Virus record (IMG/VR): IMGVR_UViG_3300032334_002567
Location: 1 to 64,000 of that record
Strand: one strand, 5' to 3'
Length of the DNA stretch: 64,000 bases
Positions 6,041-59,568 of this stretch are shown piece after piece (position 1 is the first letter of the stretch; the number at the start of each line of letters is the position of its first letter). Under the pieces are notes generated by a model. That model ran no database searches, had not been told where the DNA came from, and saw only the letters and a program-made list of their open reading frames with translations. Both the position numbers and the translations under genes were made by a program.

Positions 6041-6967
6041 ATGTCAATTAAAGAATACTTAAAAAATCGTAAAAATGAGTCTAAAGTATCGCTAGAAAAT
6101 TACAAACAAAGTTTGTATGAAAACTTGGCAATTTTTCTAGGCACAAAAGAAGAATCTTTAGATATAAAAGAAAACCTAATAAATGAAATAGAAATCAAGG
6201 AAGAGACCGATAAACTCGGCTATCCCAACAGTAATTCATTAGTTTTATCTTTAAAAACACAAGATATAAAAGAAGTTATATTAGAAAGAAACAAACTCTT
6301 ACAGTGGGCTCAAAAAAATGAAAAAGAAATCGAAAAAATAAAAAAGACGATGGCAGTTTATGAGTCGTACATGTTGTCTAAAGAGGTTACCCGCTATGTA
6401 ATAGAAAAACTAGTTGAGTCTTGCTTAGCCAAAACAGAAATGAAGATAAATGAATTATCTTTAAAAATAGATAATATAAAAAATAAAATAAAATGGCCAT
6501 TTAAAAATATTCTCATAGAAGCCATTTATCCTGCACAAGGGCTTTTAGCTGTAGAAGCGGATGTAAGTCTGGGAGAAGAGAATGTTCAAAAAGTATTCTC
6601 TATAAATTTAGAGACAAAAGAAATTGAGCTAAATGATGAAATGCCACAAAGAATAAAAAACAAATGTTCTGAACTTGTTAGCAACTTGAATGAAAGAAAA
6701 AAAGAAAAAGTTAAATTTATAAATCTCTACATGCCAATTTTAGCCGAGAATGAAAATAAAATATTAGAATCAAAAAAAGAGATTATACTCGGAATGAAAC
6801 AATACTTACCACATGGTACTAAACTAATGAAAGAGCCTATAGATCAAGAGGGGGCAACCATTTGGAAAGTTCGAATCAATGAAAACCAATTAAAAAAAGA
6901 TGGTGAAGAATACTTAGTAATAGCCGAAAGGGCAGAGTTATTCTGGGTGGGTAAGCATGAAAAATAA
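6041..6967 (+). CDS. Hypothetical protein with capsid-targeting-like N-terminus
   Basis: MSIKEYLKNRKNES; begins immediately after the terminase stop. Confidence 0.6.
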   Translation: MSIKEYLKNRKNESKVSLENYKQSLYENLAIFLGTKEESLDIKENLINEIEIKEETDKLGYPNSNSLVLSLKTQDIKEVILERNKLLQWAQKNEKEIEKIKKTMAVYESYMLSKEVTRYVIEKLVESCLAKTEMKINELSLKIDNIKNKIKWPFKNILIEAIYPAQGLLAVEADVSLGEENVQKVFSINLETKEIELNDEMPQRIKNKCSELVSNLNERKKEKVKFINLYMPILAENENKILESKKEIILGMKQYLPHGTKLMKEPIDQEGATIWKVRINENQLKKDGEEYLVIAERAELFWVGKHEK

Positions 6968-7259
6968 CACAAATAAAGCAAAAAATCTGTTAGAACAGGC
7001 ACTTTTTAATCTTCCTCAGGATTTTTCACTAGAAACAGCCAGAAGATCTATAAAAATTGCACTATCAGAAATAATACAAATAGAAAATAAACGTGAAAAA
7101 AGAAACACACTAAAAGAAAACAGAAAAGAAATTAAAAACAAATTAATGCCTTCATCTATTAAAATAATAGATGAATTAATTAAACAAGAAAACAAAAAAA
7201 TAGAAAATAATAAAAATAGAAAAGAAAGCGAAGATATAGAGATCAACATATCCGAATGA
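6957..7259 (+). CDS. Hypothetical coiled-coil protein
   Basis: 100-aa ORF overlapping both neighbours. Confidence 0.55.
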   Translation: MKNNTNKAKNLLEQALFNLPQDFSLETARRSIKIALSEIIQIENKREKRNTLKENRKEIKNKLMPSSIKIIDELIKQENKKIENNKNRKESEDIEINISE

Positions 7260-7270
7260 AAGAAGGAAAA

Positions 7271-7801
7271 ATGAAAAAAGATTGGCATGGAATAATCAAA
7301 ATACTAGAGATTCAGCATTTAAGAAACTCAAAAGTTATATGGGAAGAAAAAAATATAAATAATATTCTTCATAGCGAGGGAGAGAACTTTTTTTTAAAAT
7401 GCTGCTTTGTCAATGATGGTTCATATCCTCCGGGTAATTATTACTTTGGACTAGACAATAGGTCGTCTGTTACAGCAGGAGACCTAATAGAAGATCTTAC
7501 GGAAGAACCATCTCTAAGCGGATATAGCAGAGTTGCAGTTGATTCAACTAGTGGATTTACCATAGAAAAAGTTAATCAAGTTTATAGAGCTGCGGGTAGC
7601 ATAATAACTTTTTCTGCTATAGGCGGTTCTTGGGGACCGGTTAGAAATCTATTTTTAACCACAAGCATTAGTTCTACATCTGATAATTTGGCATCTAGTA
7701 TTTTACTTGCGTCTGCCCAGCTGTCCAGCAGCCTTACACTAACGGATGGTGACTCCGTAAACATGAGAATGGCTTTATCTTTACAAGATACAAACGGTTA
7801 G
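7271..7801 (+). CDS. Putative tail/baseplate structural protein
   Basis: YYFGL...EEPSLSGYSRVAV...ITF...WGPVRNLFL pattern typical of phage tail-associated beta proteins. Confidence 0.55.
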   Translation: MKKDWHGIIKILEIQHLRNSKVIWEEKNINNILHSEGENFFLKCCFVNDGSYPPGNYYFGLDNRSSVTAGDLIEDLTEEPSLSGYSRVAVDSTSGFTIEKVNQVYRAAGSIITFSAIGGSWGPVRNLFLTTSISSTSDNLASSILLASAQLSSSLTLTDGDSVNMRMALSLQDTNG

Positions 7802-11912: not shown

Positions 11913-12320
11913 ATGAAAACACTAACAGTAAAAAAACTTCAAGGCTTTGTTGGACATGTATGCACAATACTTACAAACTCTGTTTGTAAGAGAGATTTTA
12001 CAGACACTCAATTCCCCGATTTTTTCTTGGGAATAGTAGAAAGCGTAGATGAAGACGGAGTTTTTTCAACACATCCTATTACTGGGTGCAAGAACTTCTA
12101 CTCTTGGCCCCATATTGTTGGGATATTTCAAGAACAGGTAATAGAAGAAACAAATCCAGAATATAAACAAATAGTAGAGGAAGCTAAAAAAGTACCTCAA
12201 CAACAGCAACCGAATATATTTCCCCTAGAAATAGATCCAAAGAAACAAAGTCCTTTTGTTAATCCAGATATGATGGCGGAACTCGCTAAACAAGCAAAAG
12301 AAATTCAAAGGAAAAATTAA
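11913..12320 (+). CDS. Hypothetical protein (possible Sm/SH3-like N-domain)
   Basis: ORF coupled to primase. Confidence 0.55.
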   Translation: MKTLTVKKLQGFVGHVCTILTNSVCKRDFTDTQFPDFFLGIVESVDEDGVFSTHPITGCKNFYSWPHIVGIFQEQVIEETNPEYKQIVEEAKKVPQQQQPNIFPLEIDPKKQSPFVNPDMMAELAKQAKEIQRKN

Positions 12321-15106
12321 CGAAGTTTTTCTTTAAAGTACTTGACTCTTTCGCTTATAGGAAGATCTTTAATATTTTCCCATTCCGTTGCCGGTTCTAT
12401 ATCTCCCGTTGGTTGCTCTGTTGATTGGCCCGTTCTTCTAAACCTTGAAAGAGGAGAAGAAGCTGTATTGGATGGTCTACTCACTGCTCTGGGAAGCGGT
12501 CTTGCTGTTGGAGTCAGCCTAGGGCGTACTCCAGCACGTTCCGCAGGTGGTACAGGAGAAGCTATTGCTGCTGAGGTTCCCTGTACGGTTGCGGGTGCCG
12601 TTGTTGCTGCTGCTTGTGGGGGGGTCGCCGCAAGTCTTTTTAGCTCTTTGTAATCGTCTCTCTCTTTAATATATTTTAATATACTTTGGGCGTCAACATT
12701 TTCGTCTTTCCACGACCTTAATTGAGCATTTATTTCTCTTTCTTTATCTCTCTTAGTAAGCAGTCCGGCAGGTCTTCGTCGTCTTGGATATCTATCTACC
12801 TGAGCTTGCCAAATAGCCCACAGCATTTGTTTTGCTAAATCATAGAATTCATCATTTGCCGCCTCTGCTCTTTGCACGGCTCCCATCAAATTGGTTTGAC
12901 CTCCTGCTTTGGCAGCTAGTTCTTTTAGATAATCTTCAAGTTTTTTATTTTGTTCTTCAGCAGAAAGTTGCGAATCATTTTCTGGATCGGGGCTGCCTTC
13001 AATATCTGTATCTTGGATTTCTCTCTCCGCTGCCTCAATCTCTTTTTCTTTTTCTTCTAGCTCACTAAAAATATCTTGAAAGTTTTTTGCGGTATGCGAC
13101 TGTCCTACTCCTACCCTCGCTGTTCTACCGCTACTTCTTGTGTAGCCAGTTGCAGATGGATCTGATGCTCTGCCTTCTGCGTCTTGTGAGATTGGTACAG
13201 TTGAAGTTGTGTAACCTTGTCGCCTAGTACCTTCTCCCCCCTCTCCCCAAGAAGTTCTAGGAATATTTTGAATAATGTCGGTAGTTCGATCTTTAGCCCA
13301 ATAAACCAAATTATTGTAGCCTGGTTCACCCGGTTCCATTCCTTGTTGACCCCACTTTTTAACTGAGCCAAGGTTGCTCAATAATTGCGTAAAAATAAAA
13401 TTGTGGACATCCAGTAATCTAGATTTTAGTAAATTTCTTAAACGAGCAGGAGCACCACCAGCACATTGTGAGCTGTTCAAACAATATAAAATTCCATAAT
13501 AAAGAGCTGGAATAACTTCGACCGTTCTTCCTGCATAGGATATGTTTTTTTTAGGAAGGTACATTTCCATTATTTTTTGACCACGATCTGTTAGATGATT
13601 TATAAAACTTTGACCTCTAGCATTTTTGTTCAGCGTTGGTGCGAAAGTTCTTATTCCTTCAGTCCCATGAAGCTTGTCATTGGGGTCAGTTGGCATCATA
13701 ACTGGTATTTCTGGTCTTTTTTGTGCACCCCATATTTGTTTTGATTTTTTAAGAGCATCTGCATATTTGGGGTTCGCAACTTTGTTACCTTCTTTGTCTA
13801 TTATCTCTTTTTTTATTGTCTTTAAGTAAGTGGATGGTTTCAATAAAAGCTTGTCATTTTCGTCAAATGGAAGATAAACAATTGGTTTAACTACCTCTCC
13901 GTTTACAATTTTGTACTTTCTTTCTTCTATATCAACTCCATCAACAGGTGGAGCATATAAACCTTCTTCTTCTATCTTACTTTTAAGAACGTTCTCTGCT
14001 GCTTTTTTTGCTTCTTTTTCTTGTTGTTTCGTCAGTTCCGGCACTTTTATTTTGTTTTTATCGCCACTAGCAATAGCAGCACGTTGTAGTTCCTCGTACA
14101 TAGTTTTTTTGATAATTTTCTCTTGTTTTTTTGCCTCTATTTCAAGCAGCCAATCATAAGTTGGATCTTCTAAATATGTGGGTATGCTATTCGAATTGGT
14201 TGAAAGTGTGATTGGTTTCCATGACGCTGAGTGCTCGTCAGGATGTGAGCCAAAATGACCATGTGAACTGTGCTGAAGGTATTTCCTTATGTCGCCAACC
14301 CATTGGCCTGCTCCGACCCAATTTGTTCCTCTTGCCAATTTTCTTGTTTCTCCTCCGGAAATCTGCTCTTTAGGATGAGACAAATCGTATCCATACCTTC
14401 CCACACCAGTATTTTCTGATTCTTCTGTATGGGGTTCACCTTCTGTTCTTTCTAAACGATGATACATTCTATTCAAAAATGGTTTAGCCTTTACTTTGGT
14501 AGTATTAGTATCACTAGTTCTTCCACGTTTACCTGGATGACGAAGAGAAAACTGAACCTCTTCATCTAAGCCTAAAGATTTTAGATTTTCTGTTTGTGGC
14601 TTTATGTATTCAAAAGCTTCATCTTCAGCTATGTGCCTTATTATTTTTAGTTTTTTTCTTTCTATATCACGCTCTCTATCGTTGGTGGCACGTTCACGAT
14701 CAGCAGCATCGGGGCTATCAGGAACTGGGATTGTGGAGCTAATATTTCTGAACTGGCTCTTGGAGTTCATGTCCACAGGTATAGGCCCATGATCAGACTT
14801 TAATCTTTCAATTAATTTTTCAGGTAAATCAGAAGGCGATCCAGTCCTTAAAAAGTTTTCTATTTTTTCTACTAGCCTACCTTCTTGTATCTTACTTTTC
14901 CTAATATCATGAAGTTTTTTTAATGCATCATGAAATAGATCCCATCTCTGGGCGATTGCAGCAGGCCAGAACTGGTGATCAAATTGATTTAGAAAATCTA
15001 AATCATCTTCATCAAAATTAAGTGTGTTCTTTGAAACGTCACCATGATATTCGCCTCTACCCATTTGTGCCATCTCAAGATAAATTTTGTAAGAAATTAA
15101 AGCCAT
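12317..15106 (-). CDS. Large (929 aa) hypothetical protein, probable internal head protein
   Basis: Long ORF, MALISYKIYLE N-terminus, low-complexity C-tail. Confidence 0.65.
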   Translation of the reverse strand: MALISYKIYLEMAQMGRGEYHGDVSKNTLNFDEDDLDFLNQFDHQFWPAAIAQRWDLFHDALKKLHDIRKSKIQEGRLVEKIENFLRTGSPSDLPEKLIERLKSDHGPIPVDMNSKSQFRNISSTIPVPDSPDAADRERATNDRERDIERKKLKIIRHIAEDEAFEYIKPQTENLKSLGLDEEVQFSLRHPGKRGRTSDTNTTKVKAKPFLNRMYHRLERTEGEPHTEESENTGVGRYGYDLSHPKEQISGGETRKLARGTNWVGAGQWVGDIRKYLQHSSHGHFGSHPDEHSASWKPITLSTNSNSIPTYLEDPTYDWLLEIEAKKQEKIIKKTMYEELQRAAIASGDKNKIKVPELTKQQEKEAKKAAENVLKSKIEEEGLYAPPVDGVDIEERKYKIVNGEVVKPIVYLPFDENDKLLLKPSTYLKTIKKEIIDKEGNKVANPKYADALKKSKQIWGAQKRPEIPVMMPTDPNDKLHGTEGIRTFAPTLNKNARGQSFINHLTDRGQKIMEMYLPKKNISYAGRTVEVIPALYYGILYCLNSSQCAGGAPARLRNLLKSRLLDVHNFIFTQLLSNLGSVKKWGQQGMEPGEPGYNNLVYWAKDRTTDIIQNIPRTSWGEGGEGTRRQGYTTSTVPISQDAEGRASDPSATGYTRSSGRTARVGVGQSHTAKNFQDIFSELEEKEKEIEAAEREIQDTDIEGSPDPENDSQLSAEEQNKKLEDYLKELAAKAGGQTNLMGAVQRAEAANDEFYDLAKQMLWAIWQAQVDRYPRRRRPAGLLTKRDKEREINAQLRSWKDENVDAQSILKYIKERDDYKELKRLAATPPQAAATTAPATVQGTSAAIASPVPPAERAGVRPRLTPTARPLPRAVSRPSNTASSPLSRFRRTGQSTEQPTGDIEPATEWENIKDLPISERVKYFKEKLR

Positions 15107-16070: not shown

Positions 16071-16535
16071 ATGAAAAGCTTTGAAGAGTGGAAACAAATA
16101 AACGAATCTGTTGAAGTATCTAGATACTCTGTAGAGGTCAACTTCAGAACTAACTTGGAAGAAGCTCTAGAAGGTTTCGCCAAAATTACTTTAGGCTACG
16201 TGAGTGCCGCTTTAAAGAAGCATGGATATCATACAAAGCATGTTTTCACAGAAAAGCCCCTAAGGTTATTAGTTTCTTCTAGAAACTGGGATGATGGAGA
16301 ATGGGTTGGTGCTGTTACTTATAACCCACAGTCACATTGCTTTTATCTAAGCAAAGGCTTCTACAACAAAAATCGTAGAAGCATATCAATAGAAAATTCT
16401 CAAAAGTGCGAAGGTAAATCAGCGGCAGAAATAACCAAAGAATTACATAACATGATGCATTCTTTAAAAGACGAACCAAACAAGCATGTAGAAAAATTAA
16501 AACCTGTACCACTAAAAAGAGGTCCCAAAAAATAA
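16071..16535 (+). CDS. Hypothetical protein with capsid-targeting-like N-terminus
   Basis: MKSFEEWKQINES; CATAAATA upstream. Confidence 0.65.
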   Translation: MKSFEEWKQINESVEVSRYSVEVNFRTNLEEALEGFAKITLGYVSAALKKHGYHTKHVFTEKPLRLLVSSRNWDDGEWVGAVTYNPQSHCFYLSKGFYNKNRRSISIENSQKCEGKSAAEITKELHNMMHSLKDEPNKHVEKLKPVPLKRGPKK

Positions 16536-20325: not shown

Positions 20326-20532
20326 TCAGCCCTTTCTATCAGGCTTATGATTTCCCATCTTCTGCATAGCATCGGCAGCTATTGGCATAAAGTAGGCATC
20401 TGGATATTGCTGGCGAGCATAAGCATCTGGGTATGCCCAGTGTGCGATACCAGCACGATGTGTCTTTTCTTCCACTTGGTACAAGGGAAGCTCTCTTTTT
20501 GATTCTCCAGCCCATTGAATGAATGTCTTCAT
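20326..20532 (-). CDS. Small protein with capsid-targeting-like N-terminus
   Basis: MKTFIQWAGES; internal YPDAY duplication; CATATATA upstream. Confidence 0.6.
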   Translation of the reverse strand: MKTFIQWAGESKRELPLYQVEEKTHRAGIAHWAYPDAYARQQYPDAYFMPIAADAMQKMGNHKPDRKG

Positions 20533-25413: not shown

Positions 25414-25572
25414 ATGAAGCTACGAAATTTTTGGCTAAACCGGATAAATGAGAAAAGTATTTTTAAAGTAATAGAATGGGCACACAAAAATAATAGAAAG
25501 ATTAAAACATTAGAAATTATGGAAATAATTGATGCTTTAAAGTCCTACATAAGGGATTCTTTGCACGCATGA
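25414..25572 (+). CDS. Small hypothetical protein (52 aa, below the ORF-track cut-off)
   Basis: MKLRNFWLNRINE...; stop overlaps the next ATG (ATGA). Confidence 0.5.
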   Translation: MKLRNFWLNRINEKSIFKVIEWAHKNNRKIKTLEIMEIIDALKSYIRDSLHA

Positions 25573-32694: not shown

Positions 32695-32719
32695 TATTTA
32701 TACTTTATGTGCATAAATA
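32695..32719. promoter_or_regulatory. Divergent late promoter pair
   Basis: TATAAATA on the minus strand (32695-32702) and CATAAATA on the plus strand (32712-32719). Confidence 0.6.
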
Positions 32720-36609: not shown

Positions 36610-36981
36610 TTATTGATTACGTTGCCTAGTTTGAACATAAAAAACATAAGATTTTTTCAGATTTCCAGCTTCAACCTGACTTGGCGATTGAGTTTCTCTA
36701 TATGAGACGACTAACTTCGTACTTTCTGTTTCATAAGCCAATATACTTTTTAATTTGCCTAAAACCGATGCTACAAATTCTGGTCTTCCTGTAATTCTGA
36801 TGCCGTCTTCGCCGTATGTTGAACCTTTGTGATCATAGCTTATCGGTGCCATTTGTATAGGGGAATCAATCCTTAGAGTTTTCCAAAAGTCAATAATTTG
36901 ATCTTTAGTCGCTCTCCATTCTGATTTTTTTCCCAATTCTTTTTGGGATTCTCTATCACTAATCCAATTTTTAAATTCCAT
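36610..36981 (-). CDS. Hypothetical protein with capsid-targeting-like N-terminus
   Basis: MEFKNWISDRES; CTAAATA 4 nt upstream of ATG. Confidence 0.65.
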   Translation of the reverse strand: MEFKNWISDRESQKELGKKSEWRATKDQIIDFWKTLRIDSPIQMAPISYDHKGSTYGEDGIRITGRPEFVASVLGKLKSILAYETESTKLVVSYRETQSPSQVEAGNLKKSYVFYVQTRQRNQ

Positions 36982-37351: not shown

Positions 37352-37660
37352 ATGATAACTTTTAAAGGGTTTTTAGAATCCAAAGTAATAATAGAAGCAG
37401 ACGCACCACCACCCGCTGGTGGGCCTCCAACGCCTCCCAGTGGTGGACCTGCCGCAGGAGGAGCCGGTGGCATATCTTCGCCTGCTTCATTGCCTGGTGG
37501 GCCTCCAATGCCACCTCCTGCTATGGGTGGAGGTATGGGAGGTGGTCCTGCTATGGGTGGGCCTCCAACAGGAGATGCATCAAGTCAAAATAAATCTATG
37601 AAATTAAAAGCTTATAACGTTTGGGACGTAATAGAAAAATTAATTACCAAAGATAGCTGA
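37352..37660 (+). CDS. Pro/Gly-rich protein with capsid-targeting-like N-terminus
   Basis: MITFKGFLESKVIIEA then PPPAGG repeats; CTAAATA 5 nt upstream. Confidence 0.65.
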   Translation: MITFKGFLESKVIIEADAPPPAGGPPTPPSGGPAAGGAGGISSPASLPGGPPMPPPAMGGGMGGGPAMGGPPTGDASSQNKSMKLKAYNVWDVIEKLITKDS

Positions 37661-41824: not shown

Positions 41825-44098
41825 ATGTCAAAGCAACACAAGAAAACGAGAAACTTTCACGCTGGAATGGGTCAAGCTGTAGCGGAGAGAACGATTCTCA
41901 GAAAGAAAGAAGATGGTAAGTGGGAAACATGGGCAGATGTTGCCAATCGTGTTGCACTAGGAAATTCACTTCTATGCAAAGAATCAAAAGAACAAGAGTC
42001 AGAATATGAGGCTTTACAAAAGCATTTAATAAACGCAACAACTCTTATGAGCGGTAGACATCTACAGCACGGAGATGAGTCGCAACCAGAAAGAAACATG
42101 GAAGTTTACACCAACTGTTCAACTTCCAGCACTAGCTTCATGCTTTTTTACTTATTAATGAACGGTTCTGGTGTGGGTAGAAGTTATGACGACGACATGA
42201 TGCTTGTTGATTGGGATAACGCTCCAGCTCTTAGGTGTGTTTTAAGTGAAACTCATGCAAATTTTGATTTTTCGGCTCACGAATCTGTGAGAGATGCAAA
42301 ACACAAATATGGCAGCGGCAAAGACGTTTTATGGCATCTCGTTGAAGATACAAGAGAGGGATGGGCAAAAGCACTAGAAATATGGGAAAATGCAGCTTTT
42401 GAAAAAATCCATAAAGATAAATTGTTCATACTTGACTTTTCAAACGTTCGACCAAAAGGTGCTCCTATAAATGGAATGCAGAAACGTCCAGCTAGCGGAC
42501 CTGTTCCCTTGATGAACGCATTCAACAAAGCTGCAACTCTAAAAGCAACTGGTTTGCCCCGGTGGATGCAGACAATTTATATTGATCATTATTTTGCCGA
42601 ATGTGTTTTGGTCGGTGGGGCCAGAAGAGCAGCAAGAATGTCTACTAAGACATGGAGAGATGATAGTGTGTTAGAATTTATTACTATCAAAAGACCAATT
42701 GAATTTGCCAATAAAGGGGTAGATGAAATAACAGAGCTAAGAAAGCAAATAAGTCCAATGGGATTCTTGTGGTCTTCAAACAATAGCATTACTGTTGACC
42801 AAGAATTCTGGAAGCTCTTGAATGTAAAAAAAGGTAGTGAAGAATATAGTTCTGAATTAGCCAAACATGCAAGGAATGTTTATAAACTTGCAGTTTCTGC
42901 TTCTTATGGTGATGGCACTGGTGAGCCTGGATTTATCAATGTTGACAAACTAAATCAAGATAAGCTCGGAACTGAGAAGCTTGTTAAAGAAAGTGACTCA
43001 CTTGTTGGTAGCAAAAAATATAGCTTAAATGAAGACACAGGACTTTATATTAATAGGCTTTTGAAGAAAGCTGTTAAAAAACAGCATTTCATGATAACCA
43101 ATCCATGTGGTGAAATTTCTATTGCTGTGTGGGGTGCTTTTTGCACTATTGCGGATGTGGTTCCTTATCATGCTGAAACCTTGGAAGAAGCAGAAGACGC
43201 ATTTAGGTGTGTTACAAGAGCTTTAATCAGGGTAAACACCATGGATAGTGTTTATAAAAAAGAAGTTAAAAGAACTAACAGAATAGGAGTTGGAATAACT
43301 GGGATTCATGAATTTGCATGGAAGTTCTTTGGATTAGGATTTAAAGATCTAATAAATGAAGAAAAGTCCAAGGAATTTTGGATGACTATGGCAAGATTTA
43401 AAAGAGCCGTGCAAGACGAAGCCAGAGAATACTCAAAGAAAATTGGCGTAAATGTTCCTCATTCTGACACGACAATTAAGCCTGCTGGCACAACGAGTAA
43501 ATTATTTGGCCTCACAGAGGGATGGCATCTACCGTCTATGAGATGGTACATGAGATGGGTTCAATTCAGTAAATCAGATCCATTGGTCAAAAAGTATAGT
43601 GAATCTGGTTACCCTGTGAAAGAACTGACTAGCTACCAGAATACTGTTATTATCGGATTTCCAACTACCCCAGTTATAACTGAGCTTGGGATGGAAGACG
43701 CCCTGATTACAGCCGGTGAAGCTTCACCAGAAGAGCAGTACAAGTGGTTAATGCTCGGTGAAAAATACTGGATTCGTGGCGTAGATGTTGACGGAAATCC
43801 ACTAGATAAAGATACGGGAAACCAAATTAGCTACACGTTAAAGTACAACCCCAATAAGGTTGATTTTAAGACTTTCTGTGACACGCTAAAAAATAGTCAG
43901 AGCCTAATTAAATGTTGTTCGGTAATGCCACAAGAAGATCGTAGCAGTTATGAATATTTACCAGAGGAATCGGTGACAAAAGCAGAATACGAAAACGTTG
44001 TAAGAAAAATTACTTCTTCTTTGCAGGAAGACGTAGATCGTACACACGTAGATTGTGCAGGCGGTGCATGTCCCGTTGACTTTAAGAAAGAATCATGA
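41825..44098 (+). CDS. nrdJ: Class II (adenosylcobalamin-dependent) ribonucleotide reductase
   Basis: TNCS, GSGVG, GGARRAA, GEPG, TNPCGE, RIGVG, TTIKPAGTTS, C-terminal CAGGACP; no beta-subunit gene in the window. Confidence 0.88.
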   Translation: MSKQHKKTRNFHAGMGQAVAERTILRKKEDGKWETWADVANRVALGNSLLCKESKEQESEYEALQKHLINATTLMSGRHLQHGDESQPERNMEVYTNCSTSSTSFMLFYLLMNGSGVGRSYDDDMMLVDWDNAPALRCVLSETHANFDFSAHESVRDAKHKYGSGKDVLWHLVEDTREGWAKALEIWENAAFEKIHKDKLFILDFSNVRPKGAPINGMQKRPASGPVPLMNAFNKAATLKATGLPRWMQTIYIDHYFAECVLVGGARRAARMSTKTWRDDSVLEFITIKRPIEFANKGVDEITELRKQISPMGFLWSSNNSITVDQEFWKLLNVKKGSEEYSSELAKHARNVYKLAVSASYGDGTGEPGFINVDKLNQDKLGTEKLVKESDSLVGSKKYSLNEDTGLYINRLLKKAVKKQHFMITNPCGEISIAVWGAFCTIADVVPYHAETLEEAEDAFRCVTRALIRVNTMDSVYKKEVKRTNRIGVGITGIHEFAWKFFGLGFKDLINEEKSKEFWMTMARFKRAVQDEAREYSKKIGVNVPHSDTTIKPAGTTSKLFGLTEGWHLPSMRWYMRWVQFSKSDPLVKKYSESGYPVKELTSYQNTVIIGFPTTPVITELGMEDALITAGEASPEEQYKWLMLGEKYWIRGVDVDGNPLDKDTGNQISYTLKYNPNKVDFKTFCDTLKNSQSLIKCCSVMPQEDRSSYEYLPEESVTKAEYENVVRKITSSLQEDVDRTHVDCAGGACPVDFKKES

Positions 44099-44646
44099 AT
44101 TTCAAAGATTTTTTAGTTTGCGAACAACAAGTAAGTTTGAGCCAAAAAATTGGCCCGATCCTAGGGGACGCACAACAGTTGCGTGATCAGGCCAATAAGC
44201 TTGCTGTAAAGCATTTAGCCCAATTTTCTGGGGATGTGGTGAGAAAGATAAGGGATATACTTCATAGCCATTGGTCGGATGAACAAGTTAAATATTTAGA
44301 AAGGCTAAGAATTGTAGCTTTTAATATAGCTGATGCTATAAAAGAAAAAGGAGACCTACCAGGAATCATAGCTGCATCTGTGGAAGAATTAGATAAAATT
44401 GTTAAGGACATTGGTTCTCCAATAAACTCACTTGCAGTTGATCCAGGAACCGATAATAAAGAAACGGATTCAAAGGGCACAAGTCCCGCAATTAAGAACG
44501 TACCAAATAAGGACCAGTCCAAGCCGCCAGCACAAACTAAAACTGTTGATTCGGCCGTAACAGCTACAAATCCACTTAGCAACGATCCTGAGTCGGTTGT
44601 AAGCCCTCCTTTGGGAGGCAGCTCTGGTACTTTAGATGCGTTTTAA
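44095..44646 (+). CDS. Hypothetical protein with capsid-targeting-like N-terminus
   Basis: MNFKDFLVCEQ. Confidence 0.6.
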   Translation: MNFKDFLVCEQQVSLSQKIGPILGDAQQLRDQANKLAVKHLAQFSGDVVRKIRDILHSHWSDEQVKYLERLRIVAFNIADAIKEKGDLPGIIAASVEELDKIVKDIGSPINSLAVDPGTDNKETDSKGTSPAIKNVPNKDQSKPPAQTKTVDSAVTATNPLSNDPESVVSPPLGGSSGTLDAF

Positions 44647-47894: not shown

Positions 47895-49118
47895 CTATTC
47901 AAAATCCGACAAGTTGAAGAAATTGCATTCTTCTGAAATAAACTTTTTAGTCGAGAAATCAGTTAGAAACCAGTACCAATTCTTGGGTTTCTCTGGCTCA
48001 ACTGCTTCTCCATAGCCATCCGTTATGACGAAAACGCCGTCTGGGTACTTTTCACCATTTTGGATATGCTGCTGGATTGTTTGCTCCAATACAGCTAAAG
48101 AAGTGCCTCCACCACCATAAACAGAGACTTTCCCATTCTGCTTTGGACTAACTTCTGCCACCTTAGTATCGAAGCAAAATAGACGAACGTCAAATTTTTC
48201 GGAAGGCAATGAAGAAACTGCGGAGAAAAACCTATCTTTGTATCCCCAGCAAGACCCAGAGGTGTCAAGAAAGAAGTAAATTTTAATTTTAGATTTGCTC
48301 TTTTCAAGATGTTCAACTTCCATTTCTGACGGGATAAAGATTTCATCTAAGGCGGTAAGTCCTGATAAACGTCGATTAATTCTAGCCCATTGATCTATTT
48401 CTTTAAATTTACTTTGGTATTTGGCGTGGCACCATTTCTTGATTACAGTTTCCCATTTTCTTTTTTTTGTTTTAACTTCAAAATTTAAAACCTGCCAGAT
48501 TCCTTCCCCTAGCCCAATATGTTTTTGTATAGCATCAGAGAGACTCTTTTTTTCTTCTTTTGACATGCCTTCCAAAATATTGTTAGGAAGGTCGTTTTTA
48601 AAGGCGTGTTCGTCTACAGTGGATATTTCACCTTCACCTGGACCACCATCTCCGAATGACTTTTCAAACAAACTGTAGTAAAACTCATATGTTTCAGAAT
48701 TGGAAAGGTTAACTTTTTCTGCGAAAACGGTGTCCACCCAACAATAACTTTCCCAATTAAGTATGCTTTCTCTCTTAAAACCAAATTTTTCCACTAAAAG
48801 ATGGTTGACAACCACATCTAGGCATTGGTTACAGGCCAACATATTCACAGAGTCTTTAGTTCTTTTGCCGTGATTCAAAATCAAGTGCAAAGATTCATGG
48901 CAAATTACAAAGAGTTTATTGTAATAATCTAAAGAGTTCCAGAAATCCTCATTAAAAAGAAAGACAACAAACTCTCCTTCTTTGTCAAATTGAACGGCGG
49001 CCGTGTTGACTCTATTGGTAAAATGAGGTTTACCAATTTGCCATATTTTATAAAATATGGCATGGTGTTCTTCTAAACTCCTACTAATCTCTATCCACTC
49101 TTTATTTGTAATGCTCAT
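47895..49118 (-). CDS. Metallopeptidase (HExxH) plus VWA domain protein (DUF2201-like)
   Basis: TAAV, CHESLH, D..VN, VDEH; LDTSGS (MIDAS), FDT, GGGT, VITDG. Confidence 0.88.
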   Translation of the reverse strand: MSITNKEWIEISRSLEEHHAIFYKIWQIGKPHFTNRVNTAAVQFDKEGEFVVFLFNEDFWNSLDYYNKLFVICHESLHLILNHGKRTKDSVNMLACNQCLDVVVNHLLVEKFGFKRESILNWESYCWVDTVFAEKVNLSNSETYEFYYSLFEKSFGDGGPGEGEISTVDEHAFKNDLPNNILEGMSKEEKKSLSDAIQKHIGLGEGIWQVLNFEVKTKKRKWETVIKKWCHAKYQSKFKEIDQWARINRRLSGLTALDEIFIPSEMEVEHLEKSKSKIKIYFFLDTSGSCWGYKDRFFSAVSSLPSEKFDVRLFCFDTKVAEVSPKQNGKVSVYGGGGTSLAVLEQTIQQHIQNGEKYPDGVFVITDGYGEAVEPEKPKNWYWFLTDFSTKKFISEECNFFNLSDFE

Positions 49119-55516: not shown

Positions 55517-56056
55517 TTAATCTTTGTCTTTAAAAAATTGCATATTTTTATCTGCCCATTCTATAACCATGTGCGTTCCTCTGGACAACAGTCCTACCAA
55601 TTGGGTGGGGTTTCCAGAACCCTCTATTGATATGTTTTCTCTTTCATTATTCTCGATCCAAACCAAAGAAAATATTAAACTTTTTCTTTTCTTAAGTTCT
55701 TCTACCATTTGGTGAATAGTAACTAGAGATAAATCTGGGATGCCTAGTTCTTGATATTTTTTCTTTAGTTTTTCTTCTTGGGACTCAATTATTAGCAATA
55801 AATTATCAGAAAGAGCTTTTAAACCAGCTTCTAAATTTGCTCCACTAAAAAATATTTTACATAAGTTTGAATCAACTTTGGTTAATTTGGCTTCGAAACT
55901 TGTCGTTTCATTAGCATTTTTTACCATGTATTCTATTTCTTCTTGCACTCCCCTAGACAGTATTTCATAAAAAACAAAGAAAGGTCCGTCTTTTGTTTCT
56001 ACTAATTTAACCCCGTCTATTCTTTTAAAAATATTTATAAAATCTTCAAAATTCAT
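55517..56056 (-). CDS. Hypothetical protein
   Basis: 179-aa ORF. Confidence 0.6.
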   Translation of the reverse strand: MNFEDFINIFKRIDGVKLVETKDGPFFVFYEILSRGVQEEIEYMVKNANETTSFEAKLTKVDSNLCKIFFSGANLEAGLKALSDNLLLIIESQEEKLKKKYQELGIPDLSLVTIHQMVEELKKRKSLIFSLVWIENNERENISIEGSGNPTQLVGLLSRGTHMVIEWADKNMQFFKDKD

Positions 56057-56063: not shown

Positions 56064-56579
56064 CTATCTAATCATTGATTTTGGAAGAACCCTATAGAGT
56101 TTGATAATATGCTTACAAAGCATAGGATCATTGTTTGGATTCACAGAAGGTCTATTACCAGTGGGTGTGTATGAAGACCTTTTTCTTCCAAACAAGGATT
56201 TGTCTAGGTGGTCGGCATAATTGCCTCGCCAATAAAAATCCTTACAATTGCAGCGAACTAAAACATGACTATTTGGATCAATTTTATTAAATTCATAGCT
56301 TTTACCATTATTTGCAACTATTTTAACATTAAGTCCCGCACCATATTTGACATTTTTAAACAATATAGAAGGCATATATTCTTTGCCATTTTCTGTATTT
56401 TGAGCCAAACCTTTCAGGTATAGAGTTTTTAATCCTAAATAAGGGACCCAGTGTAGTTTTGATATCTTTATTGGGTCTATTGCGTATTGTCTTCTAGTGG
56501 CCTTAGGAAAAGCCTTCACGGTACTTGTGTACAAGTCGTTTAAACTGCTCTCTGCTATAAACCATTGTTCGAAATTCAT
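56064..56579 (-). CDS. SWIM-type zinc-finger protein with capsid-targeting-like N-terminus
   Basis: MNFEQWFIAES; VRCNCKDF...LCKH. Confidence 0.75.
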   Translation of the reverse strand: MNFEQWFIAESSLNDLYTSTVKAFPKATRRQYAIDPIKISKLHWVPYLGLKTLYLKGLAQNTENGKEYMPSILFKNVKYGAGLNVKIVANNGKSYEFNKIDPNSHVLVRCNCKDFYWRGNYADHLDKSLFGRKRSSYTPTGNRPSVNPNNDPMLCKHIIKLYRVLPKSMIR

Positions 56580-56930: not shown

Positions 56931-56931
56931 T

Positions 56932-58206
56932 ATGAGTATGGTACATGATATACTGTGTAAACACACTATAGGCGATGGAGAAAAAATCGTCATAGACCCA
57001 GTTAAAAGCAATGGTGTGTATCTTGTAGACTTAATTGATGGAAAAAAATACCTAGACTGTTCAAGTCAATATGCCAGCATGGCTCTTGGTTGGAATAATC
57101 CAACATTAAAAAAATACCTAGAAGAAAACAAAGAAAGTCTAAATTTCTGTAATTTGCATAAAATTGCAAACTGTGATTTTTACACAACAGTGTATGCAGA
57201 ATTTGTAAGCAAGTTTTCTGAAATTACAAGTGATTTCAAACATTTGTTTTTTGTAGAAGGTGGAACTTTAGGTGTAGAAAACGCAATAAAAGCAGCCTTT
57301 GATTGGAAAGCTAAGAAACTCGGGCTGACTCATAAAGCTTCTAATTCTATAGTTAACAAGTTCGATGTTATACATTTACAGCAGGCGTTTCATGGAAGAA
57401 GCGGATATTGTTTGTCTATAACTAACACAATAGCAAACAAAGTTTCATTGTTCCCAAAGTTTAATTGGACAAGAATAAAAAATCCAAAGTTAGAATTTCC
57501 TATCGTTGAAAGCAAAGTCGCAATAGATGAAGAGCTAAGCTTGTTGCAGGCCGAAAATGCTCTGAAATCGAATAATGTGGCTGCAATAGTTCTGGAAACC
57601 ATTCAAGGTGAAGGAGGTGATAATCACTTTAGAACAGAATATTTCAAAGCTTTGCGTAAACTTGCAGATCAATATGAGGCATTACTTATATTGGACGAGG
57701 TTCAAACTGGTGTTGGACTTACGGGTAAAATGTGGGCTTACCAACATTCTGGGATAATCCCAGATATAATAGCTTTTGGAAAAAAGACACAAGTTTGCGG
57801 CTTTGCTTCCACCGATAGGATTGATGAAGTTTCTGATAATGTTTTTCGTGAATCAAGTAGAATAAGTTCTACTTGGGGCGGTAATATAATTGATATGTAC
57901 AGATTTACTCAAATAATAGAAATATTACAAGAACAAAGATTGGTTGATAATGCCAAAGAAGTGGGCGAATATTTTTTAAATAAACTTTATGAAGTAAAAA
58001 ATATAAAGAATGTTAGGGGCAAAGGATTAATGATTGCCTTTGATCTAAATACAACCCAAGAAAGAAATGAAGTTCTAAAAAAGCTTCAGTCAGATATGGC
58101 TATATTGCCTTGTGGAGAAAAGTCAATTCGTTTAAGGCCACATCTCATCTTCTCTAAAGATAATGTAGATGAAGCCATATATTATATAAATAAATCTGTT
58201 TCTTAA
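56932..58206 (+). CDS. lat: L-lysine 6-aminotransferase (class III PLP)
   Basis: FFVEGG.LGVENAIKAAFDWK, AFHGRSGY, IQGEGGDNHFR, DEVQTG, AFGKKTQV, SSRISSTWGGN. Confidence 0.9.
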   Translation: MSMVHDILCKHTIGDGEKIVIDPVKSNGVYLVDLIDGKKYLDCSSQYASMALGWNNPTLKKYLEENKESLNFCNLHKIANCDFYTTVYAEFVSKFSEITSDFKHLFFVEGGTLGVENAIKAAFDWKAKKLGLTHKASNSIVNKFDVIHLQQAFHGRSGYCLSITNTIANKVSLFPKFNWTRIKNPKLEFPIVESKVAIDEELSLLQAENALKSNNVAAIVLETIQGEGGDNHFRTEYFKALRKLADQYEALLILDEVQTGVGLTGKMWAYQHSGIIPDIIAFGKKTQVCGFASTDRIDEVSDNVFRESSRISSTWGGNIIDMYRFTQIIEILQEQRLVDNAKEVGEYFLNKLYEVKNIKNVRGKGLMIAFDLNTTQERNEVLKKLQSDMAILPCGEKSIRLRPHLIFSKDNVDEAIYYINKSVS

Positions 58207-59568
58207 TCAACCAAACCAAGTAAATTTGTTATCTTTACCACGACCTAATATGGAATTTAAAAATTCTTGGTCTGGTATGTTGTGATCTCCATACACGCCA
58301 CCTGTAGGATTGCCTCCCGAACTTACGTCTGAGCTGTAGTTGATGTTAGGAGGGGCAACATCTGAACTGCCTGTTCCAAAAGGCTCTTTTCTCTTTGTGA
58401 ATGAACCCTTTTCTCTAAGAGGCGGAGCTTTTAATGGCTTGTTTTTTCCTACATATTGATATGTTGCATGATCTGCTGCAGCTGAGTCTGGGCCCATGTC
58501 TGATACGCTTCCTGTTTGAGGACCAGCACCAACAAAAGACTGATAACTTTCTGGAGGCTGTTGTGCTGATTGTGTATTTTGTGGTGTTTGATTTCCCATA
58601 TTTCCTAATTTATCAACTACAGCATTTAAAGTCTTGGTAAAATCTTGATTAACATTAGTATTGCCTAGTTTAGACTGTAAATCACGTAGTGCAGACATTG
58701 CAAGAGTTATAGACTGCAGATCTCTTTCAGCGTCTACTCCAGCTTGTCTTTGTTGTCCAGCCTTGCCCCAATTTGACCAAGCAGATTTTACATTGGCCCA
58801 TTGATTGCCTATCCAATCACCTGCTTTTTGCAACCAATTCTCTGAGTAATTATCTACATACCACTCTGTGAAAGCTACAATATCTATTCCTTGATTTTGC
58901 AATTCAAATAGTTGCTTTTTTATTTCTAGGTCTTCATCAAAAAACTCTGTTTGAACAGATTCATCTAAACTATTTTTAAGTAAACCAATTAAATTAATTA
59001 TATTTTTATGAAACTCTGGATCTGCTACTTTATTTTGTAGATCTTTTGAAACCCCTAACCTTTTGGACAAAGTATCTAATGCATGTCTGGCAACCGCTTG
59101 GGATTTTTGAAGGGGTGTCATTTGTGGTTGTGGTTGTCCATTAGTAGTTGTAGAACCTTGCTGTGCTTGGGCTTGGTTTTGATTTTGTTGTGGTTGATCT
59201 CCTATGACACCCTTTGTAAAACTATCTCCGGCTCCTTTTGCAGAACTTGCCCAAGAACCGATTCTTTTGGCTAAACCTTGTGCTGCTGAGCCTAGGGCAC
59301 TTCCCATATATTCTGCACTTGCTGATGGCTTTTCTACAGAAGAACCGGCTGAGTAACCTTGACTGGCTCTGTTAGCCAAACCTGCTGCTGTCGGGAACCA
59401 TTTGTTCAAAAATTCATTTAAAATAAGTTTATCTTCAAATTGACCATCTTCAACATACCAATTGATGAATTTTTCTGGGTCTATACCCTTGTCTGCCATT
59501 ATAACCAGTGCTTGTTCTAGCAATTTAATGTTTTTGGTGATTCTAAGACTTTCAGAAAAACTTCTCAT
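58207..59568 (-). CDS. Hypothetical putative internal head protein with a duplicated module
   Basis: AGGAG SD; GIDPEKFINWYVE and GIDIVAFTEWYVD; Gln-rich linkers. Confidence 0.65.
   Translation of the reverse strand: MRSFSESLRITKNIKLLEQALVIMADKGIDPEKFINWYVEDGQFEDKLILNEFLNKWFPTAAGLANRASQGYSAGSSVEKPSASAEYMGSALGSAAQGLAKRIGSWASSAKGAGDSFTKGVIGDQPQQNQNQAQAQQGSTTTNGQPQPQMTPLQKSQAVARHALDTLSKRLGVSKDLQNKVADPEFHKNIINLIGLLKNSLDESVQTEFFDEDLEIKKQLFELQNQGIDIVAFTEWYVDNYSENWLQKAGDWIGNQWANVKSAWSNWGKAGQQRQAGVDAERDLQSITLAMSALRDLQSKLGNTNVNQDFTKTLNAVVDKLGNMGNQTPQNTQSAQQPPESYQSFVGAGPQTGSVSDMGPDSAAADHATYQYVGKNKPLKAPPLREKGSFTKRKEPFGTGSSDVAPPNINYSSDVSSGGNPTGGVYGDHNIPDQEFLNSILGRGKDNKFTWFG

What the first reader, a model, noticed from the sequence alone, without database searches (positions are those of the whole stretch)
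6041..59568. About 13 scattered proteins share a T4 internal-protein-like capsid-targeting N-terminus
Seen: MKSFEEWKQINES (16071), MLSYKQWKSINES (23168), MNFKEWLTILEA (32725), MNFEQWFIAES (56579), MKTFIQWAGES (20532), MEFKNWISDRES (36981), MITFKGFLES (37352), MNFKDFLVCEQ (44095), MALISYKIYLEM (15106), MSIKEYLKNRKNES (6041), MKSFQKLWE (32660), and weaker cases at 25414 and 59568. Most follow a late box. Known: T4 internal proteins carry a capsid-targeting sequence (MKTYQEFIAE) removed by the gp21 protease after I/L-x-E. Inference: a large unannotated set of packaged, injected effectors, potentially anti-defence like T4 IPI.
Basis: partly seen in the sequence, partly recalled or inferred. Interest (0 to 1): 0.7.

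Follow-up and report, generated by a model that had tools for sequence, protein, structure and literature searches.

The report
Shared capsid-targeting-like leader on phage proteins
About forty otherwise unrelated proteins of this uncultured huge T4-like phage (eleven to thirteen in this window) begin with the same short leader peptide. It looks like the tag that phage T4 uses to load proteins into its head and then cuts off, so this phage may carry an unusually large protein cargo, though packaging was not shown.

Summary
All 13 N-termini are at the stated coordinates. Eleven fit a motif model trained only on genes outside the window, and two do not (15106, 32660).

**Motif and enrichment.** The motif is M-x(0-3)-F-x-x-[W/F]-[L/I]...[L/I]-x-E.
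- It occurs at about 40 of 567 N-termini in the genome, against 1-2 of 1768 internal Met positions.
- M.{1,2}F..W occurs at 23/567 N-termini against 1/1903 internal Met (p=3e-14).

**What carries it.** The carrier proteins are mostly unrelated to each other.

**Evidence for a cleavable leader.**
- In three families aligned with metagenomic homologues, the leader is followed by an essentially invariant Glu (120/120, 97/101, 70/70). P3 is L/I in two families and hydrophobic in the third, which is the T4 gp21 cleavage rule.
- The stretch before that Glu is short in the window's proteins but varies from 3 to 75 residues in homologues.
- AF2 models leave the leader outside the fold.
- Seven relatives sharing TerL or the motif encode a T4-type gp21 protease, nine a gp23 capsid protein. 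The five closest relatives' capsid and scaffold proteins start with [L/I]-x-E-A.
- This record is cut at a repeat just where the two 65%-TerL relatives place those head genes.
- Motif genes are enriched for TAAATA/TATATA boxes and are absent from a putative early region.

**Verdict.** The leader is most likely a capsid-targeting propeptide. Packaging is unproven, and the "anti-defence effector" reading is speculative.

The parts
36610..36981 (-). 123-aa protein with leader MEFKNWISDRE|S. This is the best motif score in the window.
   Evidence: Scores 18.9 bits on the outside-trained matrix, above all 1768 null positions. TAAATA lies 4 nt before the ATG. No Pfam or PHROG match. The G002 orthologue is 56% identical but has a different N-terminus.
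32725..33600 (+). 291-aa protein with leader MNFKEWLTILE|A. It is a paralogue of two other tagged proteins, at 223592 and 243387 in the genome.
   Evidence: Scores 15.3 bits. TAAATA lies 5 nt before the ATG. Paralogy shown.
20326..20532 (-). 68-aa protein with leader MKTFIQWAGE|S. It belongs to a small HWAYPD family with a tagged paralogue at 221186-221443.
   Evidence: Scores 11.3 bits. Two tandem G002 orthologues keep MKTFLNWAGE and MKSFIQWAW with synonymous codon changes.
56064..56579 (-). 171-aa protein with leader MNFEQWFIAE|S. The mature part has a CxC...CxH signature.
   Evidence: Scores 10.5 bits. Alignment A3 of 101 homologues: Glu 97/101, P3 hydrophobic in 99%. AF2 mean pLDDT is 88.7, but residues 1-10 average 51. 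TAAATA lies 4 nt before the ATG.
16071..16535 (+). 154-aa protein with leader MKSFEEWKQINE|S, from a very conserved family with more than 1000 homologues.
   Evidence: Scores 9.7 bits. Alignment A4 of 120 homologues: Glu 120/120, P3 L/I 111/120, P1' A/S/G in all, pre-Glu stretch 12-75 residues, and MKxFxxW kept at the extreme N-terminus. In the AF2 model residues 1-20 have pLDDT about 60, with a short helix at 4-10 followed by coil.
37352..37660 (+). 102-aa protein with leader M(NM)ITFKGFLE|S, followed by a Pro/Gly/Ala-rich stretch.
   Evidence: Scores 8.5 bits, 0.06% of the null. TAAATA lies 5 nt before the ATG.
44095..44646 (+). 183-aa protein with leader MNFKDFLVCE|Q. Its start overlaps the end of the ribonucleotide reductase gene.
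   Evidence: Scores 7.7 bits. In alignment A5 (70 representatives, mean column identity 24%) the only invariant column is this Glu. F3 is kept in at least 90%, P3 is L/I in 64/70, and P2 is N in 53/70.
6041..6967 (+). 308-aa protein directly after the terminase gene, with a degenerate leader MSIKEYLKNRKNE|S.
   Evidence: Scores 6.1 bits, 0.2% of the null. The orthologue in relative L004 starts MSFKNFVENK.
23168..24493 (+). 441-aa protein with leader MLSYKQWKSINE|S.
   Evidence: Scores 5.9 bits, 0.4% of the null. The G002 orthologue starts MLSYKQWKMLNE|S with synonymous codon changes.
58207..59568 (-). 453-aa protein starting MRSFSESLRITKN. Weak candidate.
   Evidence: Scores 5.4 bits, 0.7% of the null. 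The G002 orthologue starts MRSFAQHIG.
25414..25572 (+). 52-aa protein starting MKLRNFWLNRINE|K. Weak candidate.
   Evidence: Scores 5.3 bits, 0.7% of the null. The G002 orthologue starts MKLRNYWLDKTRE.
1890..2714 (-).
   Evidence: Scores 9.3 bits. The G002 orthologue MPFYQNPFDEDF lies beside that phage's head-gene region.
47895..49118 (-). 407-aa HNH-endonuclease-like protein starting MSITNKEWIEISRS.
   Evidence: Scores 8.4 bits. Matches phrog_1314, HNH endonuclease.
55517..56056 (-). 179-aa protein starting MNFEDFINIFKR. It fits the regular expression only and has no nearby Glu.
   Evidence: Found. Scores 2.3 bits on the matrix.
32364..32660 (-). 98-aa protein starting MKSFQKLWE.
   Evidence: Scores 1.4 bits, 5% of the null. 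The G002 orthologue conserves SFQKLWE.
12317..15106 (-). 929-aa protein starting MALISYKIYLEM.
   Evidence: Scores 0.8 bits, 6% of the null.
32714..32719 (+). TAAATA box 5 nt before the ATG at 32725. Similar boxes lie at 37341-37346(+), 56584-56589(-) and 36986-36991(-). Boxes farther upstream lie at 16036-16041(+) and 32695-32700(-).
   Evidence: There is no Shine-Dalgarno sequence between box and ATG.
4213..6039 (+). T4 gp17-type large terminase, which places the phage in its clade.
   Evidence: Matches phrog_2 at 7e-46. Clade relatives have 50-73% TerL identity.
1..118 (.). Perfect (GTTGGT)x19.7 repeat at the record's left end, where the assembly stops.
   Evidence: In G002 the portal, protease, scaffold and capsid genes lie just past the stretch that matches window positions 11 kb down to 1 kb.

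Best explanation
The shared N-terminus is most likely a cleavable capsid-targeting propeptide.

**Proposed parts of the leader.**
- A short amphipathic helix at the extreme N-terminus (aromatic, aromatic at +3, aliphatic at +4, typically F-x-x-W-L) docks the protein to the scaffolding core of the assembling prohead.
- A spacer follows. It is short in the window's proteins and up to 75 residues in homologues.
- An [L/I]-x-E site follows the spacer. The phage's T4 gp21-type prohead protease would cut after the Glu, releasing the mature protein inside the head, from where it could enter the cell with the DNA.

**Shown.**
- The motif and its enrichment at N-termini.
- Selection acting at the peptide level.
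- The invariant Glu, with L/I or another hydrophobic residue at P3.
- A leader that sits outside the predicted folds.
- T4-type head genes in relatives.
- Association with TAAATA/TATATA boxes.

**Inferred.** Docking, cleavage, packaging, injection and any role in counter-defence.
For: 1. **Enrichment.** 23/567 N-termini against 1/1903 internal Met. About 40 N-termini score at or above 8-10 bits, against 1-2 of 1768 null positions. The window's members are recovered by a matrix trained only outside the window.
2. **Carriers are mostly unrelated.** Only three small paralogue groups exist. Domains and folds differ: a PolyA_pol enzyme whose domain starts at residue 39, and two different AF2 folds.
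3. **Selection on the peptide, not the DNA.** Orthologues in a phage with 53% GC keep the residues through synonymous changes.
4. **Cleavage-site signature.** The Glu is kept in 120/120, 97/101 (one Asp) and 70/70 homologues. In the third family it is the only invariant column at 24% mean identity. P3 is L/I in 93% and 91% of two families and hydrophobic in 99% of the third. The pre-Glu length varies widely. For T4, Asp at that position blocks processing (PMC9026906).
5. **Match to T4's mapped determinants.** Residues 4 and 7 carry targeting and residues 8 and 10 carry processing in IPIII MKTYQEFIAE.
6. **Leader outside the fold.** pLDDT is 51 for residues 1-10 in one model and about 60 for residues 1-20 in the other, against 85-89 overall.
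7. **T4-type head genes in the clade.** All 5 TerL relatives searched have Peptidase_S77 (1e-26 to 1e-29) and Gp23 (about 1e-85). Their capsid proteins start M-N-A-N-x-K-F-L-N-E-A and their scaffolds MDK[I/L]xE-A. The G002 protease keeps T4's QLLIE.
8. **Expression class.** TAAATA/TATATA boxes precede 25/41 motif genes against 89/526 others (p=2e-9). None of the 114 genes in the TGTACCCT-box region carries the motif (p=1.4e-4).
9. **Spread.** An IMG/VR scan for the MNFKEWL coding pattern gave 87 matches. 76 open a frame of at least 40 aa, and most go on to [L/I]-x-E.
Against: - No protease, scaffold, portal or capsid gene is present in this record. Their presence is inferred from synteny with relatives and from the repeat at the contig end.
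- Three of five other large contigs that carry an MNFKEWL N-terminus gave no Pfam S77 hit, and one of these gave no capsid or terminase hit either.
- T4's own leaders score only 1.6-4 bits on this matrix.
- Carriers are not basic or small like T4 internal proteins, and several are highly conserved.
- One carrier is a tRNA nucleotidyltransferase, an unexpected head cargo.
- T4 proteins not known to be in virions (57B/Acb1, gp61.1) also start with a similar peptide, so the motif alone does not prove packaging.
- The co-folding test gave no answer.
- No proteomic or RNA data exist.
Confidence: 0.6

Rival explanations
1. The leader is a docking peptide for some other common partner, not the prohead. 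Candidates are a phage chaperone, a different protease, or a replication or transcription compartment. In this reading the conserved Glu is part of that binding site or of another processing step.
For: - The motif is a short amphipathic helix that could bind many partners.
- Carriers include a tRNA nucleotidyltransferase and an HNH-like protein, which are ordinary cytoplasmic enzymes.
- T4 57B/Acb1 and gp61.1, not known as virion proteins, start alike.
- Some motif-bearing contigs gave no S77 hit.
Against: - The [L/I]-x-E rule with near-total exclusion of Asp matches gp21-type specificity.
- Capsid and scaffold proteins of relatives carry the same site at their N-termini.
- No alternative partner was identified.
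Confidence: 0.2
2. The shared start reflects translation or transcription signals rather than a peptide function. Genes with a TAAATA box 4-5 nt before the ATG would give leaderless or nearly leaderless mRNAs, and their first codons would be constrained at the nucleotide level or copied along with a mobile promoter cassette.
For: - TAAATA lies within 12 nt of the ATG in 8/30 motif genes against 11/537 other genes.
- The same arrangement appears in many IMG/VR matches.
Against: - Most motif genes have ordinary Shine-Dalgarno leaders or are coupled to an upstream gene.
- Residues are kept through synonymous changes across 35% and 53% GC genomes.
- Trp has a single, G-rich codon, yet it is among the best-kept positions in the window's members and in family A4.
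- In family A4 the motif and the Glu are separated by up to about 60 variable residues.
Confidence: 0.05
3. The motif is real, but it marks only proteolytic processing. In this reading the proteins are prohead core or assembly factors that are degraded and expelled like T4 gp22, gp67 and gp68, not retained and injected cargo.
For: - Several carriers are as conserved as core genes (50-68% identity to G002; more than 1000 homologues at 66-82% identity).
- Scaffold proteins of relatives carry the same N-proximal site.
Against: - About 40 different proteins, including enzymes, is far more than any known scaffold set.
- The mature domains are predicted as compact folds without obvious further sites. 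Internal sites were not analysed systematically.
Confidence: 0.12

Closest known systems
Capsid targeting sequences of T4 internal proteins IPI, IPII and IPIII (Mullaney and Black 1996, as reviewed in PMC9026906)
   Same: - An N-terminal leader of 10-19 residues on unrelated cargo proteins.
- Aromatic residues three positions apart (T4 Y4/F7; here F/Y and W/F), followed by an aliphatic residue and a Glu where the gp21 protease cuts.
- The phage clade has T4-type terminase, gp21 protease, scaffold and gp23 capsid genes.

Sources.
   Different: - Trp-Leu is strongly preferred here in the window's members, whereas T4 has Phe-Ile. T4 leaders score only 1.6-4 bits on this phage's matrix.
- About 40 carriers here (7% of genes) against about 3 in T4.
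- Spacers of up to 75 residues occur in homologues.
- Many cargos are conserved rather than hypervariable, and they are not basic.
- Nothing has been shown experimentally.
Propeptides of head, inner-body and ejection proteins of giant phages phiKZ, 201phi2-1 and SPN3US, cut after Glu by gp175/gp245-type proteases (PMC9026906, PMC5694885)
   Same: Giant phages in which many head-internal proteins are processed after a Glu by a distant gp21 relative, and which deliver a large protein cargo.
   Different: - From my own knowledge, those sites have small residues at P3 (S/A/G-x-E) and long propeptides, with no shared short N-terminal motif.
- Their capsid lineage differs.
- Here P3 is L/I or another hydrophobic residue, as in T4.
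T4 head proteins gp22, gp23, gp67, gp68 and Alt, processed at [L/I]-x-E
   Same: The same cleavage rule. Relatives' capsid and scaffold proteins start with F-L-N-E-A and I-V-E-A.
   Different: Those proteins are structural or core components and lack the aromatic targeting helix. Here the helix is the shared feature.
Encapsulin cargo-loading peptides (analogy only)
   Same: A short peptide that directs diverse cargo into an HK97-fold shell.
   Different: From my own knowledge, encapsulin peptides are usually C-terminal, are not cleaved, and bind the shell protein directly.

Membership tests
T4-type capsid targeting sequence (CTS) propeptide | Lies at the extreme N-terminus of the precursor. 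| tested here: met
   The motif is 40-80 times more frequent at N-termini than after internal Met. In family A4 it stays at the N-terminus even when a 45-residue spacer is inserted.
T4-type capsid targeting sequence (CTS) propeptide | Two aromatic or hydrophobic targeting residues three apart (IPIII residues 4 and 7). | tested here: met
   F/Y at residue 3-4 and W/F three residues later are the best-conserved leader positions. The T4 determinants are taken from PMC9026906.
T4-type capsid targeting sequence (CTS) propeptide | Ends in a gp21 site, [L/I]-x-E, with Glu required and Asp not processed. | tested here: met
   This holds at sequence level only. Glu is kept in 120/120, 97/101 and 70/70 homologues, with a single Asp. 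P3 is L/I in 93% and 91% of two families and hydrophobic in 99% of the third.
T4-type capsid targeting sequence (CTS) propeptide | The same genome encodes a gp21-type prohead protease and scaffolding core. | tested here: inconclusive
   - Neither is found in this record. The record is a fragment ending in a repeat, cut where G002 and G012 place the head genes.
- All 5 TerL relatives searched have both.
- 3 of 5 other motif-bearing contigs gave no S77 hit.
T4-type capsid targeting sequence (CTS) propeptide | The precursor is incorporated into proheads and the leader is removed, so the mature form is in virions. | not testable with these tools
   There is no cultured relative: the best cultured terminase match is 32% identical. 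No RNA or proteome data exist. Co-folding gave no answer.
T4-type capsid targeting sequence (CTS) propeptide | Sequence likeness to T4's own leaders. | tested here: not met
   T4 leaders fit the loose regular expression: all three internal proteins are among its 8 hits in 268 T4 frames. On this phage's matrix they score only 1.6-4.0 bits, below the 6-bit level. The pattern is shared, but the peptide is not the same.
T4 internal proteins as anti-restriction cargo (IPI-like) | Small, basic, fast-evolving mature proteins with a counter-defence function. | tested here: not met
   - Length and pI do not differ from the rest of the proteome.
- Several carriers are 50-68% identical to orthologues in a phage with 65% TerL identity.
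- No defence-related domain is found in the window's carriers.
- Only relatives have tagged Acb1-like and cREC proteins.
phiKZ-type propeptides | Small residue at P3 (S/A/G-x-E) and a phiKZ-type protease. | tested here: not met
   P3 is L/I or another hydrophobic residue. The clade's protease matches Pfam Peptidase_S77, and the G002 protease aligns with T4 gp21.

The most novel reading that the evidence does not exclude
A clade of uncultured huge T4-like phages tags about 7% of its proteome for loading into the head. The tagged set includes conserved proteins of unknown fold and enzymes: a CCA-adding enzyme here, and Acb1-like and cREC cyclic-nucleotide-processing proteins in relatives. The virion would then deliver a ready-made early proteome, with counter-defence and tRNA-repair activities, together with the DNA. 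Many of these genes would be read from late promoters placed directly on the start codon, as leaderless mRNAs.
Probability: 0.3. Interest if true: 0.8.

Novelty: new variant of a known kind. Interest (0 to 1): 0.6.

Why it matters
- **Predicting cargo from sequence.** If the leader is a capsid-targeting propeptide, the packaged and injected protein cargo of an entire uncultured huge-phage clade could be predicted from sequence alone. That cargo would be about ten times more diverse than T4's.
- **A route to function.** It would give a handle on dozens of proteins with no annotation. It would also suggest that enzymes such as a CCA-adding enzyme, or in relatives an Acb1-like nuclease of cyclic-nucleotide signals, act from the first moment of infection.
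- **A practical rule.** A conserved aromatic helix plus [L/I]-x-E is a rule that annotation pipelines could apply, and it offers a candidate tag for loading foreign proteins into large capsids.
- **If it is not capsid targeting.** A 10-residue leader shared by 40 unrelated proteins would still mark an unknown sorting or processing system.

Tried and rejected
- **Head genes in the record.** Pfam Peptidase_S77 and Gp23 searches of the own record found nothing. phmmer with the portal, protease and capsid proteins of Flavobacterium phage immuto also found nothing. The head module is missing from the record.
- **Domains in carriers.** Pfam and PHROG scans of 29 carrier and candidate proteins gave only these:
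  - PolyA_pol / tRNA nucleotidyltransferase for the protein at 226185.
  - A DUF5872-like match for the protein at 177503.
  - phrog_18980 for the protein at 56064.
- **Fold searches.** Foldseek PDB searches with both AF2 models gave no match at E <= 0.001, so the mature folds remain unassigned.
- **Co-folding.** The G002 protease, scaffold and 75 N-terminal residues of a tagged protein gave no answer: score 0.00, partner pLDDT below 40. This is neither support nor evidence against.
- **Scoring T4 leaders.** They fall below threshold on this phage's matrix.
- **Physical properties.** Length and pI of carriers do not differ from other proteins.
- **Sequencing runs.** Only DNA runs from one study hold the window, and no RNA run does.
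- **Nearby phage records.** megablast of 8 kb against phage records found nothing.
- **TTGTACCCTA box.** It is not present in the window above chance. It belongs to another part of the genome.
- **Chance or simple paralogy.** Rejected.

Full report
**Context**

The window is the first 64 kb of a 381,443-bp IMG/VR virus record. The record is linear, and CheckV estimates it is 79% complete. GC is about 35%. The gene at 4213-6039(+) is a T4 gp17-type large terminase (phrog_2, 7e-46).

- The best match in phage records is an unannotated 595-kb uncultured phage (49% identity). Cultured T4-like phages of Microcystis, Flavobacterium and cyanobacteria follow at about 30%.
- IMG/VR holds a clade with 50-73% terminase identity, on contigs up to 572 kb.

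So this is an uncultured huge phage with T4-like packaging genes.

**Checking the observation**

A simple gene call gives 567 genes in the record.

- The pattern ^M.{1,2}F..W occurs at 23 of 567 predicted N-termini but after only 1 of 1903 internal Met (Fisher p=2.7e-14).
- 23 of the 106 F..W in the whole proteome sit at residues 3-4.

To avoid circularity I built a position matrix from 20 motif N-termini outside the window and scored the window's 80 genes against a null of 1768 internal Met positions.

| Claim | Result |
|---|---|
| 36981, 32725, 20532, 56579, 16071 | beat every null position |
| 37352, 44095 | top 0.06% of the null |
| 6041, 23168, 59568, 25414 | 0.2-0.7% of the null |
| 32660, 15106 | 5-6% of the null, not supported |

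Genome-wide, 39-42 N-termini (about 7% of genes) score at or above 8-10 bits, against 1-2 of 1768 null positions.

**What the motif is**

Anchored on the first aromatic residue, the consensus is F-[K/S/E/Q]-[E/Q/N/D]-[W/F]-[L/I/F]. A Glu follows 1-5 residues later, usually with a hydrophobic residue two positions before it and Ser, Ala or Gly after it.

- The carriers are mostly unrelated. BLAST finds only three small paralogue groups.
- One genome-wide member is a tRNA nucleotidyltransferase whose Pfam domain starts at residue 39.
- None of the window's members has a Pfam domain. The only PHROG match among them is one unnamed family, for 56064-56579.

The conservation acts on the peptide, not the DNA. 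Orthologues in relative G002 (532 kb, 53% GC, 65% terminase identity) keep the residues through synonymous changes. For example, MLSYKQWKSINES here is MLSYKQWKMLNES there.

**Comparative evidence for a cleavable leader**

I aligned homologues for three window proteins.

| Family | Window gene | Sequences | Conserved Glu | P3 residue | Pre-Glu length |
|---|---|---|---|---|---|
| A4 | 16071 | 120, from more than 1000 hits | 120/120 | L/I 111/120 | 12-75 residues |
| A3 | 56064 | 101 | 97/101, one Asp | hydrophobic 99% | mostly 3-12 residues |
| A5 | 44095 | 70 cluster representatives | 70/70 | L/I 64/70 | 10-23 residues |

- **A4.** The residue after the Glu is Ala, Ser or Gly in every sequence. 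MKxFxxW stays at the extreme N-terminus in 94 of the 120. A highly conserved domain begins right after the Glu.
- **A3.**
- **A5.** Mean column identity is only 24%, and the Glu is the only invariant column. The Phe is kept in at least 90% of sequences, and P2 is Asn in 53/70.

A conserved N-terminal element, a pre-Glu stretch of variable length, an invariant Glu that almost never becomes Asp, and a conserved domain starting directly after it together describe a propeptide.

The AF2 models agree.
- The 56064 protein folds with mean pLDDT 88.7, but residues 1-10 average 51.
- In the 16071 protein, residues 1-20 are at about 60, with a short isolated helix at 4-10 followed by coil.

**Link to T4**

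From the T4 record, IPII and IPIII start MKTYQEFIAE|A and IPI starts MKTFKEF. A review of T4 head assembly reports three points (PMC9026906):
- In the IPIII leader, targeting depends mainly on residues 4 and 7, and processing on residues 8 and 10.
- Asp at position 10 blocks processing.
- Related phages use such leaders to load varied proteins.

The positions conserved here map onto those residues. The match is one of pattern, not of peptide: T4 leaders score only 1.6-4.0 bits on this phage's matrix, which strongly prefers Trp-Leu.

**Head genes**

The record has no detectable gp21 protease, gp23 capsid protein or portal. All five terminase relatives searched have Pfam Peptidase_S77 (E between 1e-26 and 1e-29) and Gp23 (about 1e-85), 10-20 kb from the terminase.

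The record appears to be cut just where the head genes should be.
- In G002, the stretch matching window positions 11 kb down to 1 kb is followed by portal (335258), protease (337220), scaffold (337906) and capsid (338843) genes. G012 has the same layout.
- The record's left end is a perfect (GTTGGT)x19.7 repeat inside a truncated frame, a typical assembly break.

In the relatives:
- The capsid proteins start M-N-A-N-x-K-F-L-N-E-A.
- The scaffolds start MDK[I/L]xE-A.
- The G002 protease keeps T4's QLLIE. Three other relatives have [L/F]-I-D at that position instead.

The [L/I]-x-E-A rule therefore seems to operate in this clade.

One caveat: of five other large contigs found through an MNFKEWL start, only two gave an S77 hit, and one gave no capsid or terminase hit.

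**Expression class**

- TAAATA or TATATA lies within 60 nt upstream of 25/41 motif genes against 89/526 others (p=2e-9).
- In four window genes TAAATA ends 4-5 nt before the ATG with no ribosome-binding site between, which would give leaderless or nearly leaderless mRNAs. The same layout recurs in IMG/VR matches.
- A different box, TTGTACCCTA, occurs 84 times, almost all on one strand between 272 and 323 kb. None of the 114 genes there carries the motif (p=1.4e-4).

This fits a late class that contains the tagged genes and an early class that does not, but the timing is inferred.

**Spread**

A scan of IMG/VR for the DNA pattern encoding MNFKEWL gave 87 matches.
- 76 open a frame of at least 40 aa, and 56 of these have no upstream in-frame ATG.
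- Most continue with [L/I]-x-E.
- Many lie on contigs of 200-527 kb from the same samples as the terminase relatives.

Near the terminase, 19/901 frames in clade loci carry the motif, against 0/505 in the cyanophage-like loci with about 30% terminase identity.

**Are they anti-defence effectors?**

Evidence is thin for the window.
- The carriers have no known domains.
- They are no smaller or more basic than other proteins.
- Several are as conserved as the terminase.

In relatives, a protein matching Pfam Acb1 (29.2 bits, cut-off 27) and a cREC-domain protein (3.6e-18) carry the tag. Both are absent from this genome. T4's own Acb1 (57B) and gp61.1 start MMEFKDF and MKTFKEFIKED. That either widens the set of possible T4 cargo or warns that the peptide alone does not prove packaging.

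**Verdict**

- The best explanation is a capsid-targeting propeptide removed after Glu by a gp21-type protease (confidence about 0.6).
- The rivals are another docking partner, processing without retention, and a translation or promoter artefact. The last is largely excluded.
- It is a new variant of a known kind. The mechanism is T4's, but the scale, the Trp-Leu form, the long spacers in homologues, the conserved cargos and the promoter-on-start-codon layout are new.

Noticed in passing
window 1-118: A perfect hexamer repeat, (GTTGGT)x19.7, forms the left end of the record, inside the truncated frame 1-1859(-). It is probably the reason the assembly stops 4 kb before the terminase and lacks the head genes.
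   Followed up: partly
window 32714-32719(+), 37341-37346(+), 56584-56589(-), 36986-36991(-): TAAATA boxes end 4-5 nt before the ATG, with no Shine-Dalgarno sequence between. If they are T4-type late promoters, the mRNAs would be leaderless or nearly so. The same layout is common among IMG/VR genes that start MNFKEWL.
   Followed up: partly
G000 about 272,000-323,000 (outside the window): The box TTGTACCCTA(T/A) occurs 84 times, nearly all on the + strand, about one per gene over 50 kb. It looks like a phage-specific promoter class for a block of 114 small genes. None of those genes has the leader.
   Followed up: partly
L004 6480-7031; L006 13183-13761; L024 12969-13562; L033 3885-4433; G002 315003-315551: In relatives, downstream of the terminase, a 184-aa 2H phosphoesterase matches Pfam Acb1 (anti-CBASS) just over the cut-off and starts with the leader (MEFKQFL...). 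It is absent from this genome.
   Followed up: partly
L029 2997-3374: A 126-aa protein in a relative starts MQTFNQFLIE|N and has a cREC_REC (cyclic-phosphate processing receiver) domain from residue 14.
   Followed up: no
T4 record NC_000866: 73952-74410 (57B/Acb1) and 18966-19130 (61.1): T4 Acb1 starts MMEFKDF and gp61.1 starts MKTFKEFIKED. Both are close to the leaders of IPI-III, although I know of no report of either protein in virions.
   Followed up: no
window 56064-56579(-): The mature part has invariant C110, C112, C155 and H157 (CxC...CxH), reminiscent of a SWIM-type zinc finger. Pfam does not detect one, and the AF2 model has no PDB match.
   Followed up: partly
G000 226185-227420(+): A tRNA nucleotidyltransferase (PolyA_pol, phrog_2244) carries the leader on a 38-residue N-terminal extension. 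Its G002 orthologue has a motif-like start followed by a Gly/Ser-rich linker.
   Followed up: partly
window 36610-36981(-) against G002 485478-485948: The orthologue of the best-scoring window member has a different N-terminus without the motif, so the tag may be gained and lost. A mis-called start was not excluded.
   Followed up: no
window 39510-41543(+), 41825-44098(+), 47895-49118(-): SbcC-like nuclease subunit, ribonucleotide reductase and HNH endonuclease genes lie among the tagged genes.
   Followed up: no
G000 348024-361238(+): A single 4404-aa open frame lies in what appears to be the tail or baseplate block at the right end of the record.
   Followed up: no
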